Part shown: positions 12,641-20,552 of the stretch, piece after piece
Numbering within the stretch: position 1 is the first letter of the stretch
How the letters are laid out: each line of letters begins with the position of its first letter
Source of the DNA: Dimorphilus gyrociliatus
Lineage: Eukaryota > Animalia > Annelida
Length of the DNA: 64,000 nucleotides
Direction: 5' to 3'
NCBI GenBank assembly: GCA_904063045.1
Contig: CAJFCJ010000005.1
Span: forward strand, 3,749,689-3,813,688
Notes under the pieces: model-generated
The model's input: only the letters and a program-made list of their open reading frames with translations
The model's database searches: none
What the model was told of the DNA's origin: nothing
Position numbers and translations under genes: made by a program

Positions 12641-13920
12641 GATATTTACATGTATTGTATACACAAATTACTTGCTCTCTTTGTACTAAGCTCGTATTAT
12701 CCAAGATTCTCATGTTGTACAAGATGAAAAATCATAAGAGAATACAGTAGTAATTTTCAGCTAGGCAATACTTTTATACCAAAAACAAAGGAAGCAGGAG
12801 AAGGTATACATGTTTAAGATTATATAGAAAATATGTTCTTCCCTTTGAAATTAAAAAATTGAAACTCTGAGAGAGAGAGAGAGAGAGGTATGCAAAATCA
12901 AAGAGCAGAAGAAAAGGAATAAAAAAAATTAAGAGAAATGATAGAAAGATAGATTAAGAGAATATAAATGAGAATTATTCTCTATATCGACTAGTGGACA
13001 TTATGTACAGAATATTGTTTATTTTAGCATTTAATAAATATATACAATGTAAATTATGATCTAATCCTAAATTAATAGCTTCTTCCTATCTATTCTTTAT
13101 CCTCCTACATATTTTCCTTTTTATAATCCGGTTTTGTTTATCATCTAATCTTGTCCGAAATGAATTTGGTACTTTAGGATACTTTACAATATATATGTAA
13201 ATATATAGTATATACGTGTTTTCGCGCGCTATTTAGACGCTTTCAATGAGAGGTTTATAAACAATATGCCAAGTATATGAAACGCGTGTATTAGATACAA
13301 ATTTATAAACTATATCTGCCATATAGCATATCCTATATTCCATATGCCATTTATCCATATACAGTATATATACTGTATATAAATACAATAACGTTTGATA
13401 GTACTATACTCCCTTTTATTGGAAAGTTTGTTAAATCTTAACCGCGAAAGATTATCTACTTTATATACAGTATATACTGTATATGTAACTGCGGGATATG
13501 TAAACTTAACTATATGAGTTGAAAGAGCATACATTCTCAATAGGGTTATCTGTTTATTACTGGAATATGCGGTGCGTAAACTGTATATTGATATTAAATA
13601 TCCTTAATATACTGATCTAAAAACTACGAGAATAATATCTATATATTTTGTTTTATTCTTGTTATTATTGATAACTAATAGCGAGTTTTAAATGTGCATT
13701 ATACAATATATATATATACTGTATATAGATGTTCTTCTATTTCAATGAGTATAACAAGCGTTATAGAGAATTATTTTGCTGCTGTAAATATTGTTTTATT
13801 TTGCAGTTTAGGCCAAGATCTTTCTCTCGTTTAAGATTTATATTTATAGGCTATTGACGTAACATTTAGTATTTTTCTAACATAAAAACATAAACAAGAT
13901 GAAAAAGTGATTTATACAAT

Positions 13921-15113
13921 TTACGCTTGAGTATTCGCATGCGTCTGTGATGGCTTATACTGGATTTCCTCGATCTTGTAACCTTTTGGCGATGGCCACT
14001 TGGCAGAACCAATTAACCAATATGTGATAATTTCTTCTGATCCTTGTATTTGCGTGGACTCTCTTTCCTGGAATTGAAAGCCTCCAGCCAAGGTGAGAAG
14101 GTCGAATGTTGATGATGAAATGTGGATACATTGAGCTGTTAAAAAAACGGGCACTTACGAAAAATGTGGGCTATTTAAAACCGCTGGCGAATAGATAACT
14201 AGATATTTGATATTCGTTCCTCCGTCTGACGTTATCGTTAATTATAAACAAGAGAGCAGGCGGTGTTAAGGGGTCAATATTGAAATGTTTGGAAAAGCCT
14301 TATCTGACCACATTTTTTTACTTTAACCTACAACCTCTTCATATCACTTACGTAATCCCTTCGATTCCATTAAATTAGCTCTATTGACCGTTTTCCCGAA
14401 TAGACAATATCTCGGCATTTTCAGTCCAACAACGCCAGCTACCACAGGGCCACTATTCATCCCTATTCTTAATTTTAGCGTCGAATTGTCCAGATGCCAA
14501 ACGGACAATGTGCCAACTGAATGTAATAAATCTAAAGCCATATTAGCTATCTCTTTAGCGTGAGAATAACCGTTTCTCCTAGGAACGCCTGATGCAACCA
14601 TATAGGCGTCACCTGAAATAGTAAGAAATAAGCTAATGAATTAGACATTTTATTGATGAGTTGAGTGGAAAGAAGCCTTTCGCCGCTAACCTATAGTTTC
14701 TACTTTATAGACGTCATAGTTATCCGTCTTCTCATCGAATAATTTGTACAACATGTTAAGCATATCAACAACTTCAAGAGGAGTAGATCTGGCAGAAATA
14801 TCAGTGAAGCCAACTATATCGGAGAAATAGACCGTAGCTGATTCAAAATGTTCAGGCTCAATTTCCTCGCTCGATAAGAGTCTTTCGGCTATTGATCCGG
14901 GTAATATCTATATATTGTATAATAATGAATAGCCCAATTAAGAGAGAATGATGGAGAAAAATTGTCTTAATATTGAATTGACTTTTTAACCTTTTGTAAC
15001 CTCTACATCCAATCTAATTTCTTTTACTTACCCTTAATAAAAGGAACTTGGTCTTTTGCTTCTCATCTTGAAGTTCATCTGTCTGCTCTTTTAGGCTGGT
15101 AAAACATTAAATA

Positions 15114-15146
<33 letters not shown>

Positions 15147-16471
15147 TACAGTATACTGAACTACTAAGAGACGAAAGAGGTTAAAGGAAGGGAAAGGGGA
15201 GAGTAATATACAAAGACGGGAACATAGAAGGATAGATAATTAAATAAAATACATGAAACCTACCTTAGAGCAAAATTCTGAAGACCGGTTGTTAATTTAA
15301 GTATTGAATAGATAGTTATAGGAATCACAGATAGTACAATAACTATTAAGGACGTATAAGCTATCAAATTCTGTTTGGTTGTTACGAGTGTCTGCTCCAA
15401 CCAGATTGTTATATTATTTGTTAGTTCATCTTCAATTATTTTAAGTATATTTATATATGATGTTATATTACTTATCCATATATTCCCTCTTTGAACTGAT
15501 GGCGGTACTCTAATATTACGCTTTATCTCGTTTCTTAAATTTGTAAGGTCAATCTCTAGTTGACTATTCGTGTAATATTTATTAATTAATGTATTTATTC
15601 CTTCGGAATAGATTCCAGCTTTTTTCAAGTAGGAAATTCCCTCGGATTTTGTATCTACATACCAAACTAGATCCGACTGAGGCATGTAACCTCTGCCGAA
15701 GAATGTACTTCCGATTGCTCTTTCTTTACCAGTCATTTCTTTACCATGTATTAATAAATGGAAAGCGACTAAATCATTCCATTGTGGTAAATTTTTTGCA
15801 ATAATTATACCATCAACTAGAATTTGAATGAGTGCTTTATTTGCCTCCGAAAAGAATGTAATTTGTTCGTTTACCGGAGACGTTTTACCGTCCAAATTAC
15901 GTCTATTTTCTTTAATGTATTCGTGTAAACTTTGTCTTGAATCCAAATATCTCGGAGAACTGGCTGTTTTTCTCCATCCTTTAACATTAGTTAGAGCTTC
16001 GTCAGTTTCAACATATTTGAAACGAGATAAGTCTTCAAAAACTTCTGGAGATCCCTTAGAACTAACAAATAGGGCAGTACTGCCTCTCTCCTTTTGAAGT
16101 GCGTGTATAACTCCACTTATCTGAACGCTAAATGATATTGAATCTTTCACAGATACAGTTAAATTATATAAAACAAGTGCATTAACCACGGCTATTATTG
16201 ATTCAATCAATAAGATAACAATCGGGACACAGCACACTATAAGAATCTTTCCAAATTCCTTATTTCTGTTCCACTTTGTTTTAATTGCTTGACGATTAAA
16301 ATCTTCAGTCAACTCCTTTCCTTTAGTAGGAGTTTTCATACTTTTAGTATTAAACGGTGGTGAAATAGAATTTGAGGTGTGGTTACTTGCTGCAAGCTTA
16401 TCAGCTTCGATAGATGGAATAGAAGAGATTTTACTTACTGGAACGACTTTTCTTGTTGATTTTGAAGCCAT
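13921..16471 (-). CDS. NIT-domain membrane guanylyl cyclase A (TM-NIT-TM-coiled coil-cyclase; about 654 aa; degenerate active site); exons 16471-15264, 15095-15032, 14907-14691, 14612-14352, 14135-13921
   Basis: NIT-type motifs [18 protein letters not shown] and [12 protein letters not shown] between two hydrophobic helices; class III cyclase motifs [36 protein letters not shown]; no kinase-homology domain. Junctions are phase-consistent (1965 nt). Confidence 0.88.
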
Positions 16472-17206
16472 TTCGACTATTTTTATTAAAAAATAAAATT
16501 TCTTCTATATTCCTGTTTGGCAAAGTATGCAAAATATGCTTTTACAATTTGAACTAAAAGAGAGCTTTTTGCTATCTTCTCTGTAATTAAAGGTGAATTT
16601 ATATATACAATATATACTGGTTAATTGCTATCTACATAGATATAAATTCCCTCTCTTTCGTATTCCTTTACCTATAATTTTATCCCGTTTTCGTTCCTTA
16701 TATACTTTTGATACACTTACAGAAAAGAGAAGGTAGCGCTAGAGTGTAAATTAAACATCTTATGAATATTAATTATTATAATTATTTTGTCATTTTCTAA
16801 CGTAATCATAATGATTAATGAATATTAGGATATTCCGGGATATGAATTTTTCTTTTTTCTCTAATTTAGATTTATTAATATTCACATAATGTAAAACATT
16901 ACACATACAAGTACACAAACACATATACATTGTATATATGTATATATATGTATATATGTGTATAGGTATACTAGTAAACTAATATTAAATCATTACTAAT
17001 GAATATACTGTATTACAAACCACACATCTTCTATTAAAATAGTTGGAATACGAAAAATATATGGTAGATAAGGATAACATACAAGAAATTAAAGAATGAT
17101 ATTTGATGTGGTCGTAGTAGTAGAAGTAGAGTCGTAGTTGTGGTGGTGGTGATGATGGTAATAATTATATCAATATTTATTCATTCTTTTTTAACTGCTT
17201 TCAAAG

Positions 17207-18345
17207 TCACGTTTGAGTTGAAGCGCTCTTGAATTTTTCATCCTGCAAGTCGAGATATAACTCTCTTCTAACTGGAAAAAGGTTAGAACCCAATAGCCAA
17301 AATGTGCACATGCTACCTTTTCCTTTGATTTCTATAATACCACGTTCAGCAATTTGAAAGCCACCCAAAGCTCTGAGGCAGTCACACGTAGCAGATGACA
17401 TTTGAATTCGTAGAGCTATCGTTTGAAAAGTCGAAAAAAGAGTAATTTTAATTAATTTTCAAGCTTATTTTAGATTTGTTGACATTTTTTTAACCTATGA
17501 TTTGACACGTTCTCTACTTTTCATTGATATGACATCAAATATCCACTTTTAGATAAAAAGAGTTAAAGACAAAAGTGAATTGTTACTAACGAAGTGATGT
17601 TGATTCCATTCTTGATGCAGTATTAACGCTATCGCCGAATAAACAATATCTTGGCATTTTCAATCCTAAAATGGGACGGAAAAGTAATAGAATATATATA
17701 CTGATAGGGAGAGAGAGAGGAAAAGAAAGAGAGGCAACTGTTACTTATTTATCTAATTACAATCAATTTTCTTATTAAGATATCAATTTAAGTAGAGAAA
17801 AGAAAGATAAATAGAAAGACAGAAAGAAAGGGAAAAAGATAGAGAATCTATTAATTAAAAATATCTTTATAATTATACAACTTACCTACAACACCAGCAA
17901 CAACGGTACCTTAAATGAAACAAAATTATGACCTTATTTTTTTCCTACTATTATGTAATATTACCAGAATTCAGGCCTATTCTGAGAAGCAATCCCTGTT
18001 CGCTGAGATGCGGAACTTTTAATTGTGGTATGGAATTTATTAAATCTAAAGCCATGTTTGCAATTTCTGAAGCATGTTGTATGCCATTTCGTTTAGGAAC
18101 ACCTGATGCAACCATATATGCATCTCCTGATTACGATGTTTTTGGACAAGAATTCAATGAAAACAAGAGAAATCGAATTATAACTTTGTAGATATGTTTG
18201 TTTTTACAATATAGTATCTATATACAGTATATATAATTGTGTTATCTTTTATACCTATAGTTTCAACTTTGTAGACATCGTATAGATCGGTCTTGTCGTC
18301 GAATAGATTGTATAAATTATTCAACATCGTAACAATCTAGTTAAA

Positions 18346-18381
<36 letters not shown>

Positions 18382-20552
18382 TTTTGCAATATATACAGTA
18401 TTATTATGAATATAAAATGATCAAATATTTTTAATTCAAACCTGAATTGGTGTTGATTTGGAAGATATTTCAGTAAATCCAACAATATCTGAAAAATAGA
18501 CTGTTGCTGATTCGTAGACTTCTGGTTCTATTTTTTCACATAATAAAAGTTTTTCAGCTATACTTTCAGGTAGCATCTGTAATAAGAAATAGAATAAGAA
18601 AGGAAACGAGTTAATATACAGATTATTTGTGTATGTAAGAACAGATAGCAACAAAGTTAAGCAATTGAGGGGGAAGAGAGAGAGAGAGAGAGAGAGAGAA
18701 ACAACAAGAAAAAGGAATGCAAGGAAAGATAAGCTTTAGCTATTAAAAAAACTAACTAATCTCGTTTAATTATTAATATCGATATTATTTTGTTTTATTA
18801 TTCTATACTCTTTCTTACCCGTTACTCTTATCTGTAACAAGATCACTGTCACCTCTCCTCTCTCTCTCTCCCTCTTTTACTCCTTTGTATCTCTTTCTAT
18901 TTTAATATTTATTTTAGTAGAAAGAGAAAGAAAGAGGATTGAAAATTAGGAGAATAATCGAAGGAAAATACTAAAAAAACACGGGGTTTAATAGTCATTA
19001 TAATTTATTTTTGGTGAAATTACCCTTAGTAGCAGGTACTTTGATTTTTGTTTTTCATCTTTTAACTCTTCTGTTTGTTCACGTAATCTAAGTAGAAAGA
19101 AAACAATAAAAATAACTTTAATCTTGCCAACTAAACAACGTTTATATTTGATTAATAACAATTAAGATTAGGATGTAGAGTTTTATTGATAAGAGAAATA
19201 AAGTAATATTACCCAACAGCGAAAGCGTGTATCCCGGAAGTTAGTCTATGCAGAAAATATATAATAATAGGAGATAAAAGTAAAACTAGGCCCATTAATG
19301 TTGAGTAAATTGCTAAAGTGTATTGTGAAGATTTTAACTGGCTGTTCAAATCAAGTTTTATTTTCAAAGCAAGATCGTCTTCAATTTCTTTTAACAGATT
19401 AATATATAGAGTCATGTTCTCGAACCACCATTTAGCCATTTGTACTGATTTATTTATTGGTCTATTTAACCCAATATCTGTTCTCATTTTGGACAATGTT
19501 CGGCTTAGAGATGTATTACTGAATCTGCCTTTCAAAGCAATTGTTACATCACTCGAATAAAGTTTCGCCTGAGAAAGATAAGATAGGCCATTCGATTTCC
19601 TTTCTAGATACTTTATAAGATTTGTTTGAGAGAATGAACCTGATGAAAAACACAAAACGAGAGATGCTAAAAAACGAAGTTGTATGACTTCGATATTAAC
19701 GAAATAATTTTGTAAAGTATACAATTTTTGAACTTATTAAAGCTTACCTGAAGTAAAATACGTGCTACCAAATGCTCTTTCAATTCCACCTAATTCCTTA
19801 CTTACAATCAGCATGTGAAAGGCAACGAGTACTTTCCACATATTTCCATTCTTACTGTTTTGAATAGTTTTTGACAAAAGAAGTATAAGATTCGAATTAA
19901 TATCAGTATAAAAGTCAAGTTCTCCTTGAATTGTCGAATTTTTAAAATTCAAATTTTCTCTATGATTTTTTATATAGGTGAGTAGAGATAATTTTGAATT
20001 CATATAATCAACACTGGAATAGTCTGGCCAGAATGGTAAATTTTTAATAGCCATATCGGTTAAAGGATATTTAAGACTCTCAAGCGATAGCTTAACAGTT
20101 TCGTCTCCTCCACTGCTTATGTACAAGACCGTTGTACCTCTTTCAATTTGTATGTTATGTACAACTTTACTTGATTGAATTGTAAATTCAATTGAAGATA
20201 GAATATTTTTAATCTGAATATAACTATCAGATATTTGAGATAGTGAAACAGCATTATATACTAGAAGAACAACCACTGGAATGAACGCAACTGTTATTAT
20301 TTTGGCGAGTTGCTTAAATCTTCCTCTCGAAGTAAAAGGATCATCCGAAATAAAATAGTCGAGAAATCTTCGAATACAACTTGCTTTAATTGTGACCATT
20401 TGTTCTTCCAAGTTACTGCGTTCCGATCTGATGGATGACACGTATAATGAACTGTGAAGTCCATTTGAGACGATACCTGATTCCCTTCTCCTAGTCGAAG
20501 AGGCTGATTCACTTATTGCTTTTTCCACGGACCGCCTAATCGAAAGATCCAT
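17207..20552 (-). CDS. NIT-domain membrane guanylyl cyclase B (about 660 aa; intact active site); exons 20552-19748, 19639-19213, 19087-19024, 18576-18442, 18336-18255, 18126-17965, 17909-17886, 17665-17591, 17415-17207
   Basis: NIT motifs [12 protein letters not shown] and [12 protein letters not shown]; two TM helices; cyclase motifs [51 protein letters not shown]. Junctions are phase-consistent (1983 nt). Confidence 0.9.

What the first reader, a model, noticed from the sequence alone, without database searches (positions are those of the whole stretch)
13921..14612. NIT-GC A looks like a pseudo-cyclase partner for its neighbour NIT-GC B
GC-A keeps both metal-binding Asp (FSDIVG, IGDAY), the guanine-selecting Glu/Cys, and the Asn. 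However, it reads [13 protein letters not shown] instead of FGD[10 protein letters not shown], so the transition-state Arg is Leu (codon 14371-14373), and the pyrophosphate-binding KGKG motif reads IQGSEE. GC-B has every residue. Class III cyclases build each active site from the Asp pair of one chain and the Asn/Arg/Lys of the other. An A homodimer should therefore be nearly dead, and an A/B heterodimer would have one working site, paralleling the alpha/beta asymmetry of soluble GC but arising here by local tandem duplication. The frame and splice sites of A are intact, which argues against a pseudogene.
Basis: partly seen in the sequence, partly recalled or inferred. Interest (0 to 1): 0.75.

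Follow-up and report, generated by a model that had tools for sequence, protein, structure and literature searches.

The report
Half-dead NIT guanylate cyclase beside intact twin
A small marine worm carries two neighbouring nitrate/nitrite-type sensor enzymes, and one has lost, and kept lost under selection, exactly the half of the active site that its neighbour can supply, so it probably makes cGMP only in a mixed pair, as several known cyclases do.

Summary
The window is from Dimorphilus gyrociliatus (annelid). Two tandem minus-strand genes, A (16471-13921, 5 exons, 654 aa) and B (20552-17207, 9 exons, 660 aa), both encode TM-NIT-TM-coil-class III guanylate cyclase. A keeps both metal Asp, the beta4 Arg, the guanine Glu/Cys and the Asn. 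It reads [13 protein letters not shown] and IQGSEE where B and about 110 of 116 relatives read [13 protein letters not shown] and IKGKG.

A is not a pseudogene. It is spliced and transcribed, and an intact orthologue in a sister species carries the same changes. Its cyclase domain has dN/dS about 0.07, as constrained as B's. Among 98 conserved columns, A departs at only 7, all in the two motifs that supply the transition-state Arg and the triphosphate Lys.

The best reading is an Asp-donor ("C1/alpha/NeoR-like") half-cyclase that needs a complete partner, with B the obvious candidate. Pairing with B is inferred, not shown. Earlier unchecked notes from this scan report Asp-less cyclases elsewhere in this genome that could be alternative partners. 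A conserved new Arg (T574R) leaves a small chance of a relocated catalytic Arg.

The principle is known from sGC, tmAC, ODR-1/DAF-11 and NeoR/RGC, so this is a new member of a known kind. Separately, A's introns 2 and 4 are 88-94% conserved between species, far above the exons, and this is unexplained.

The parts
13921..16471 (-). Gene A (NIT-GC A), 654 aa. Exons 16471-15264, 15095-15032, 14907-14691, 14612-14352 and 14135-13921.
   Evidence: Model with GT-AG at every intron. Pfam NIT and Guanylate_cyc. RNA contigs give junctions 14135|14352, 14612|14691 and 14907|15032, and a continuous exon 1 (15264-16707). The public model DgyrCDS3993 is 100% identical where it overlaps.
17207..20552 (-). 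Gene B (NIT-GC B), 660 aa, 9 exons: 20552-19748, 19639-19213, 19087-19024, 18576-18442, 18336-18255, 18126-17965, 17909-17886 (24-nt micro-exon), 17665-17591 and 17415-17207. All catalytic residues are canonical.
   Evidence: A 2295-nt transcript contig joins the exons, including the micro-exon. The sister-species orthologue L004 has the same exon lengths for exons 1-8.
14371..14394 (-). Helix alpha4 motif of A: K570, N573, R574, N576 and L577 ([10 protein letters not shown]). The canonical form is FGD-TVNTASR. L577 is at 14373-14371.
   Evidence: The sister species reads FGE-TVNRANL.
14032..14049 (-). Beta7-beta8 loop of A: IQGSEE (Q614, S616, E617, E618), replacing I/V-KGKG. The triphosphate Lys is lost and two acidic residues are gained.
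   Evidence: The sister species reads VQGSEE.
14608..14820 (-). Retained 'donor-side' residues of A: D454 (14820-14818), E494 (14700-14698) and D498 (14610-14608). R545 (14469-14467) and C566 (14406-14404) lie further on.
   Evidence: These columns are invariant in 116 relatives and in both A orthologues.
14136..14351 (-). Intron 4 of A, 216 nt, 94% identical to the sister species. It lies inside the finding's span.
   Evidence: No Rfam hit, no fold better than shuffles, no tRNA.
14908..15031 (-). Intron 2 of A, 124 nt, 88% identical to L001 and conserved in a third taxon (L003).

Best explanation
Gene A encodes a membrane NIT-domain guanylate cyclase whose catalytic domain is a one-sided half-enzyme. 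It keeps the residues that one chain gives to an active site: the two metal Asp, the P-loop-like FSDIVGFT and the beta4 Arg. It has lost the residues the other chain must give: the transition-state Arg of the NxxxR motif and the beta7-beta8 Lys. The Lys loop now carries acidic residues. An A/A dimer therefore has two crippled sites. Paired with a complete subunit, most plausibly the adjacent sister paralogue B, the dimer has one working site (A's Asp side plus B's Glu/Cys/Asn/Arg/Lys). It also has one dead pseudo-site (B's Asp side plus A's Glu/Cys/Asn/Leu/Gln) that may be regulatory. Because the two NIT sensors are only 38% identical, such a heterodimer would place one catalytic site under two different sensors. 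Shown here: the residues, the gene models, transcription, purifying selection, and the confinement of A's changes to two motifs. Inferred: loss of homodimer activity, heterodimerisation, and the partner's identity.
For: 1) Residues and models. 2) A departs from the consensus in both species at only 7 of 98 conserved columns (570, 574, 576, 577, 614, 616, 617). All 7 lie in the two motifs that hold the Arg and the Lys (hypergeometric P = 2.4e-8). 3) The sister-species orthologue L001 is an intact 656-aa ORF with the same 5 exons and reads NRANL and QGSEE. The B orthologue L004 keeps NTASR and KGKG. 4) dN/dS of the cyclase domain is 0.073 for A (dN 0.068) and 0.048 for B (dN 0.080). 5) A and B are sister clades (97/97). 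A's stem branch is 0.42 against 0.20 for B, and terminal rates are then equal. 6) Both genes are spliced and present in the same RNA-derived run. 7) Precedents: the CYG12 structure assigns Asp/Asp/Arg(beta4) to one monomer and Asn/Arg/Lys to the other (PMC2576301). NeoR lacks NxxxR, keeps Glu/Cys, donates the Asp pair and is active only with RGC1/2, and those genes are clustered (PMC12264004). ODR-1/DAF-11 is an obligate heterodimeric receptor GC (PMC5225109). AC8 C1 reads ...IANKLES, resembling A's ...RANLMES.
Against: There is no direct evidence of A/B contact or of co-expression in the same cells; one bulk run, held as contigs, cannot rank expression. B needs no partner. A keeps Glu494, Cys566 and Asn573, which a wholly dead site would not need, although NeoR does the same. 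T574R, conserved in both species, places a new Arg one helical turn before the lost one and might partly replace it. Unchecked notes from this scan report Asp-less NIT-GCs and an Asp-less receptor GC elsewhere in this genome; these would be more complementary partners than B. Only two species carry the informative exons.
Confidence: 0.55

Rival explanations
1. A pairs not with B but with one of the Asp-less cyclases encoded elsewhere in the genome. That would form a truly complementary, mutually obligate heterodimer like ODR-1/DAF-11.
For: Earlier notes of this scan describe two NIT-type GCs that lack a metal-binding Asp, and a receptor GC that has lost its metal-binding half, in the same genome. 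ODR-1/DAF-11 is a precedent.
Against: Those notes are unchecked and I could not fetch the sequences. Adjacency and sister paralogy favour B. In the chytrid system the partner genes are clustered.
Confidence: 0.17
2. A is an active homodimeric cyclase whose catalytic Arg has moved from position 577 to 574 (NTASR to NRANL), with an altered phosphate loop.
For: T574R and R577L are both fixed in two species. This column is T in 110 of 116 relatives. Residues i+1 and i+4 of a helix lie within about 60 degrees of each other (inference from helix geometry).
Against: The Lys of the beta7-beta8 loop is also lost and replaced by an acidic GSEE. D570 is variable (K or E). No coordinates were available to test whether R574 can reach the substrate. 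In NeoR, restoring NxxxR alone did not restore activity, so such sites decay in several places at once.
Confidence: 0.12
3. A is a non-catalytic decoy or brake. It binds B or other GCs and lowers their output, or it signals without making cGMP.
For: An A/B dimer has at most half the sites of B/B. RGC1-cat mixed with NeoR-cat showed Vmax reduced to 50%. The acidic loop might occlude the partner's site (inference).
Against: A pure decoy has no need to keep D454, D498, R545 and the FSDIVGFT loop, yet all are retained. A's NIT domain is also under purifying selection (dN/dS 0.12).
Confidence: 0.13
4. A is a decaying duplicate (a young pseudogene).
For: Loss of two catalytic residues; longer stem branch.
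Against: The ORF and splice sites are intact in two species with dS about 0.9. dN/dS is 0.07. The gene is transcribed and correctly spliced.
Confidence: 0.03

Closest known systems
NeoR/RGC1-RGC2 heterodimeric rhodopsin-guanylyl cyclases of chytrid fungi (PMC12264004)
   Same: A sensor domain is fused through a coiled coil to a class III GC. One subunit lacks the NxxxR Arg but keeps Glu/Cys and donates the metal Asp pair. The partner supplies Glu/Cys/Asn/Arg. There is one catalytic and one pseudo-site. The genes are clustered in the genome and the two subunits carry different sensors.
   Different: The sensor here is an extracellular NIT domain between two TM helices, not a rhodopsin. A keeps the Asn (NeoR has Thr) and also loses the beta7-beta8 Lys. 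It is an animal, not a fungus. Nothing has been tested biochemically here.
ODR-1/DAF-11 obligate heterodimeric receptor GC of C. elegans (PMC5225109)
   Same: Membrane receptor GCs in which each monomer gives part of a single catalytic site.
   Different: There both partners are described as incomplete and mutually dependent. Here only A is incomplete and B is fully canonical. Those proteins have ANF-receptor-type ectodomains and a kinase-homology domain, which NIT-GCs lack.
Soluble GC alpha/beta and membrane adenylyl cyclase C1/C2
   Same: An Asp-donor chain (alpha, C1) lacks the Arg. AC8 C1 reads ...IANKLES where A reads ...RANLMES. The other chain gives Asn/Arg/Lys, and the degenerate site is regulatory (PMC2576301; PMC12264004).
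   Different: In those enzymes each chain lacks what the other supplies. A keeps Glu/Cys/Asn. Tandem alpha1-beta1 gene arrangement in vertebrates is recalled from memory and was not tested here.
NIT-GC family (Moroz et al. 2020, PMC7400543; Platynereis NIT-GC1/2, bioRxiv 10.1101/2023.08.02.551600)
   Same: TM-NIT-TM-cyclase architecture. The tree places A and B with gastropod NIT-GCs. Platynereis NIT-GC1 makes cGMP after an NO donor, and this requires the NIT domain.
   Different: In the parts of these papers that I read, no degenerate or heteromeric NIT-GC is mentioned ('heterodimer' occurs 0 times in the Platynereis text).

Membership tests
Class III nucleotidyl cyclase catalytic domain (PF00211) | Profile match over the whole domain | tested here: met
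   A's exons 3, 4 and 5 match profile positions 2-57, 59-140 and 145-182 of 183 (E 7e-16, 6e-28, 1e-4). The best PDB match is ANPR1 at E 1.5e-67.
Class III nucleotidyl cyclase catalytic domain (PF00211) | Two metal-binding Asp and the beta4 Arg (donor side) | tested here: met
   D454, D498 and R545 in A; D462, D506 and R553 in B.
Class III nucleotidyl cyclase catalytic domain (PF00211) | Guanine-specifying Glu and Cys | tested here: met
   E494 and C566 in A; E502 and C574 in B. These columns are invariant in 116 relatives.
Class III nucleotidyl cyclase catalytic domain (PF00211) | NxxxR: ribose Asn and transition-state Arg | tested here: not met
   A has N573 but L577 (TTA, 14373-14371), and the sister species has the same. 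B has N581 and R585. So A is a member of the fold but not a complete catalytic unit.
Class III nucleotidyl cyclase catalytic domain (PF00211) | Beta7-beta8 loop Lys (KGKG) | tested here: not met
   A reads IQGSEE and its orthologue VQGSEE. B reads IKGKGS.
NIT-domain guanylate cyclases (NIT-GC) | NIT domain (PF08376) flanked by two TM segments, then a helix and the cyclase domain | tested here: met
   NIT E-values are 1.7e-22 (A) and 1.4e-16 plus 1.7e-4 (B). Each protein has exactly two hydrophobic 19-aa segments, at about 75-100 and 368-394 in A and about 80-107 and 376-401 in B (Kyte-Doolittle scan).
NIT-domain guanylate cyclases (NIT-GC) | Phylogenetic placement among NIT-GC cyclase domains | tested here: met
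   The A+B clade is sister to gastropod NIT-GCs (95/95) within a 92/98 group that holds the other NIT-GCs.
Asymmetric heterodimeric class III cyclases (sGC, tmAC, ODR-1/DAF-11, NeoR/RGC) | One chain keeps the Asp side but lacks Arg/Lys, and a partner chain has Asn/Arg/Lys | tested here: met
   A and B respectively.
Asymmetric heterodimeric class III cyclases (sGC, tmAC, ODR-1/DAF-11, NeoR/RGC) | The two chains are made in the same cells | tested here: inconclusive
   Both are spliced in one RNA-derived run (contig depth 9-16 for A, 27 for B). That run is bulk and held as contigs.
Asymmetric heterodimeric class III cyclases (sGC, tmAC, ODR-1/DAF-11, NeoR/RGC) | Physical heterodimer; activity requires both chains | not testable with these tools
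   No multimer prediction or assay was available.
Pseudogene | Broken frame or splice sites, neutral evolution, no transcript | tested here: not met

The most novel reading that the evidence does not exclude
A and B form a two-sensor receptor. Two different NIT domains (38% identical), perhaps tuned to different NO-derived species, jointly gate a single catalytic site. The dead site (B's Asp side facing A's Glu/Cys/Asn and an acidic GSEE loop) acts as an allosteric or self-occluded pocket. A's dosage or isoform is set by the two ultraconserved introns. This would be the first heteromeric NIT-GC, and a coincidence detector for NO metabolites in an animal.
Probability: 0.2. Interest if true: 0.7.

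Novelty: new member of a known kind. Interest (0 to 1): 0.45.

Why it matters
NIT-GCs are a recently recognised and barely characterised route for NO/nitrite/nitrate signalling in invertebrates, with one enzyme assayed so far (Platynereis NIT-GC1). A conserved, selected half-enzyme next to a complete twin implies that NIT-GCs, like soluble GC and some receptor GCs, can work as mixed dimers. That changes how single-gene knock-downs and single-gene expression assays of the family should be read. It also gives a compact, testable pair for studying how two sensors control one catalytic site. The principle itself is well established in class III cyclases, so this is an extension and not a surprise.

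Tried and rejected
1. Pseudogene: rejected.
2. More NIT-GC copies in the window: none.
3. Linkage of the A and B orthologues in the sister species: contigs L004 and L001 do not overlap, so tandem order there is unproven.
4. A orthologues beyond close relatives: two word-index searches found only P0001 and P0002 (exon 1) and nothing above 58% identity for the cyclase domain. B's public protein did not appear, perhaps because of the length window.
5. Biopython's ML dN/dS on the whole gene gave an implausible optimum (dS 0.19). I used NG86 and the per-domain ML values instead.
6. Conserved introns as structured RNA, snoRNA/miRNA, tRNA, paired intron helices or repeats: no Rfam hit at E<=1, z-scores from -0.7 to +2.2, no tRNA, no intron2-intron4 complementarity, single copy in the window.
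7. RNA runs: only one holder, kept as contigs, so there is no expression ranking and no view of rare isoforms.
8. Species of the sister contigs: the run accessions were not found in the paper library.
9. Platynereis NIT-GC sequences: no supplement is held.
10. Structure prediction was not run. Only a monomer is offered and no coordinates are returned, so it could test neither the dimer nor the reach of R574.
11. The large representative search was not used, because relatives were already in hand.

Full report
**What is there.** The window is AT-rich eukaryotic DNA with short introns. A word-index search with A's first exon returned DgyrCDS3993 of Dimorphilus gyrociliatus at 100% identity, so the genome is that miniature annelid. 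Six-frame reading and splice-site inspection gave two tandem genes on the minus strand.
- Gene A has 5 exons (16471-15264, 15095-15032, 14907-14691, 14612-14352, 14135-13921) and encodes 654 aa.
- Gene B has 9 exons (20552-17207) and encodes 660 aa. One exon is a 24-nt micro-exon at 17909-17886.
- All introns are GT-AG and both frames are open.
- Pfam finds NIT (PF08376) and Guanylate_cyc (PF00211) in both.
- Each protein has exactly two hydrophobic segments flanking the NIT domain.
- There are no further copies in the window.
- The finding's span, 13921-14612, is A's exon 4, intron 4 and exon 5.

**The observation.**
- A keeps D454 (FSDIVGFT), E494 and D498 (KVETIGDAY), R545, C566 (PRYCLFG) and N573.
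- A reads [13 protein letters not shown], with L577 encoded by TTA at 14373-14371.
- A reads IQGSEE at residues 613-618 (14049-14032).
- B has D462, E502, D506, R553, C574, N581, R585 and IKGKGS.
- HMMER alignments to solved ANPR1 and GC-C show A matching throughout except at these two motifs.
- In the same call, adenylyl cyclase 8 gives two useful comparisons. Its C1 half, the Asp donor, reads ...DIANKLES, like A's ...RANLMES. Its active C2 half reads WGKTVNLASRMDS. So the Lys at A's 'FGD' position is not in itself disabling.

**Is it decay?** No.
- A Logan contig from another run (L001, 4802 bp) carries an orthologue of A with 76% amino-acid identity. It has the same five exons and an intact 656-aa frame. 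It reads [13 protein letters not shown] and VQGSEE.
- A contig from the same study (L004) carries the B orthologue with the same exon lengths for exons 1-8. It reads [13 protein letters not shown] and IKGKGS.
- Pairwise NG86 estimates for the cyclase domain are dN 0.068, dS 0.93, ratio 0.073 for A, and dN 0.080, dS 1.69, ratio 0.048 for B. The NIT regions give 0.12 and 0.15. A's catalytic domain is therefore as constrained as B's.
- A maximum-likelihood tree of 24 cyclase domains puts (A, A-orthologue) at 100/100 and (B, B-orthologue) at 98/95. The two are sister clades at 97/97, next to gastropod NIT-GCs.
- A's stem branch is 0.42 against 0.20 for B, and terminal branches are alike. This fits a burst of change after duplication followed by constraint.
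- The duplication predates the two species. It is old: 38% identity in the NIT region and 66% in the cyclase domain.

**Where A changed.** I aligned A, B and their orthologues with 116 relatives from the second search. There are 98 columns that are at least 85% conserved and where B keeps the consensus. A departs in both species at only seven of them: D570K/E, T574R, S576N, R577L, K614Q, K616S and G617E. All seven lie in the two short motifs (11 conserved columns) that supply the transition-state Arg and the triphosphate Lys (hypergeometric P = 2.4e-8). The donor-side residues and the Glu, Cys and Asn are untouched. The motif windows were chosen from known function and not blindly, so the P value is indicative only.

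**Transcription.** One public run (X1) holds the locus as contigs that skip the introns, so it derives from RNA. The contigs match the window with no mismatches.
- One contig joins A's exons 2 to 5 exactly at my junctions.
- Another covers exon 1 continuously from 15264 to 16707.
- A 2295-nt contig joins B's exons, including the micro-exon.
- The exon 1-2 junction of A and intron 4 of B were not listed. Both introns hold (TA)n repeats, and the tool says it dropped joints at repeats.
- Contig depths (9-16 for A, 27 for B) cannot rank expression.
- The public 521-aa model uses a GT inside exon 1 and deletes the second half of the NIT domain and TM2. The continuous contig and the coding conservation of that stretch in the sister species argue for the 654-aa form.

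**Mechanism.** In class III cyclases each site is built across the dimer. One monomer gives the two metal Asp and the beta4 Arg. The other gives the ribose Asn, the transition-state Arg and the beta7-beta8 Lys (CYG12 structure, PMC2576301). A therefore has a complete donor face and a defective acceptor face.
- An A/A dimer has two defective sites.
- A with a complete partner has one full site and one pseudo-site.

The closest worked example is the chytrid NeoR/RGC system (PMC12264004).
- NeoR lacks NxxxR, keeps Glu/Cys and supplies the Asp pair. It is inactive alone and active with RGC1 or RGC2.
- The non-catalytic site behaves as an allosteric brake.
- The genes are clustered.

ODR-1/DAF-11 is the receptor-GC precedent in animals (PMC5225109). 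I therefore read A as an Asp-donor half-cyclase that needs a partner, with B as the leading candidate. That choice rests on adjacency, sister paralogy, joint conservation and joint presence in one RNA sample. None of these shows contact.

**Caveats and rivals.**
- T574R is fixed in both species, at a column that is Thr in 110 of 116 relatives. It puts an Arg one turn before the lost one. A relocated catalytic Arg cannot be excluded without coordinates. The simultaneous loss of the Lys and the gain of two acidic residues argue against full activity.
- Earlier notes from this scan, unchecked by me, report NIT-type GCs lacking a metal Asp and a receptor GC lacking its metal-binding half elsewhere in this genome. 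Such proteins would complement A more exactly than B does.
- A might act mainly as a brake on B.
- Degenerate receptor GCs are not rare. Teleost retGC-like proteins read FGDTVTTASLMES...VKGSED, and an oyster NIT-GC reads FGDTVHAASKMES.

**Novelty.** NIT-GCs are known (PMC7400543; bioRxiv 10.1101/2023.08.02.551600), and so is the asymmetric-dimer principle. In the library searches and in the parts of the papers I read, no degenerate or heteromeric NIT-GC is described. This is a new member of a known kind and is of moderate interest.

**An unexplained extra.** A's intron 4 (14136-14351) is 94% identical to the sister species, and intron 2 (14908-15031) is 88% identical. Intron 2 is also conserved in a third taxon.
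- For comparison, A's exons are 72-91% identical at the nucleotide level. A's introns 1 and 3 are 51-62%. All eight B introns are 52-69%.
- Exon 3 between them is 91% identical, so its synonymous sites are conserved too.
- I found no Rfam family, no fold better than shuffles on either strand, no tRNA, no pairing between the two introns, and no other copy in the window.
- Intron 4 ends with an AG / 12 nt / GTAAGT arrangement that could be an in-frame micro-exon or a recursive splice site. The one transcript contig skips it.
- Another agent reported over-conserved introns in a different gene of this window.

Noticed in passing
window 14136-14351 and 14908-15031 (also 14691-14907; 13841-13919; 13447-13611): Introns 4 and 2 of gene A are 94% and 88% identical to a sister species whose exons show dS of about 1. 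A's other introns and all B introns are at background (51-69%). Exon 3 (91% nt), the first 79 nt of the 3'UTR (91%) and a 175-nt downstream block (83%) are also conserved. There is no Rfam hit, no stable fold, no tRNA and no repeat. The function is unknown; an intronic enhancer or a splicing/dosage control element are possibilities.
   Followed up: partly
window about 14159-14170 (minus strand, inside intron 4 of A): An AG / 12 nt (CCCACATTTTTC) / GTAAGTG arrangement lies 23 nt before the real acceptor and has the same layout in L001. It could be an in-frame 4-residue micro-exon or a recursive splice site. It is not used in the one transcript contig available.
   Followed up: no
window 15264-15673 (within exon 1 of A): The public protein DgyrCDS3993 (521 aa) splices from an internal GT (after ...SDLV) to exon 2. 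This removes 133 residues, namely the second half of the NIT domain and TM2, and would put the cyclase domain on the wrong side of the membrane. A transcript contig runs unbroken through this stretch, and the stretch is conserved as coding in the sister species. It is probably a mis-annotation.
   Followed up: partly
window 17886-17909 and the gene structures of A and B: B has a 24-nt micro-exon encoding T-V-V-A-G-V-V, confirmed by RNA and conserved in L004. A's four introns all sit at positions shared with B, and B has four more. So A lost four introns (or B gained them), and the two ultraconserved ones are among those A kept.
   Followed up: partly
proteins P0031, P0055, P0069, P0092 (teleost retGC-like) and P0081 (Crassostrea NIT-GC): These are independent half-dead receptor GCs. 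The teleost proteins read FGDTVTTASLMES and VKGSED, converging on A's R-to-L change and GSE[ED] loop. An oyster NIT-GC reads FGDTVHAASKMES and has a disrupted KGKG loop.
   Followed up: no
window 17013-16707: B's transcript contig ends at about 17013 and A's begins at about 16707. The two mRNAs are therefore separate and only about 300 nt apart, in the same orientation. The intergenic DNA is not conserved with the sister species.
   Followed up: no
window 17815-18215: A joint at depth 99.6 with AA..AG ends and only 21 nt on one side in run X1. It is most likely an artefact of the (TA)n repeat in B's intron 4 and not a splice.
   Followed up: no
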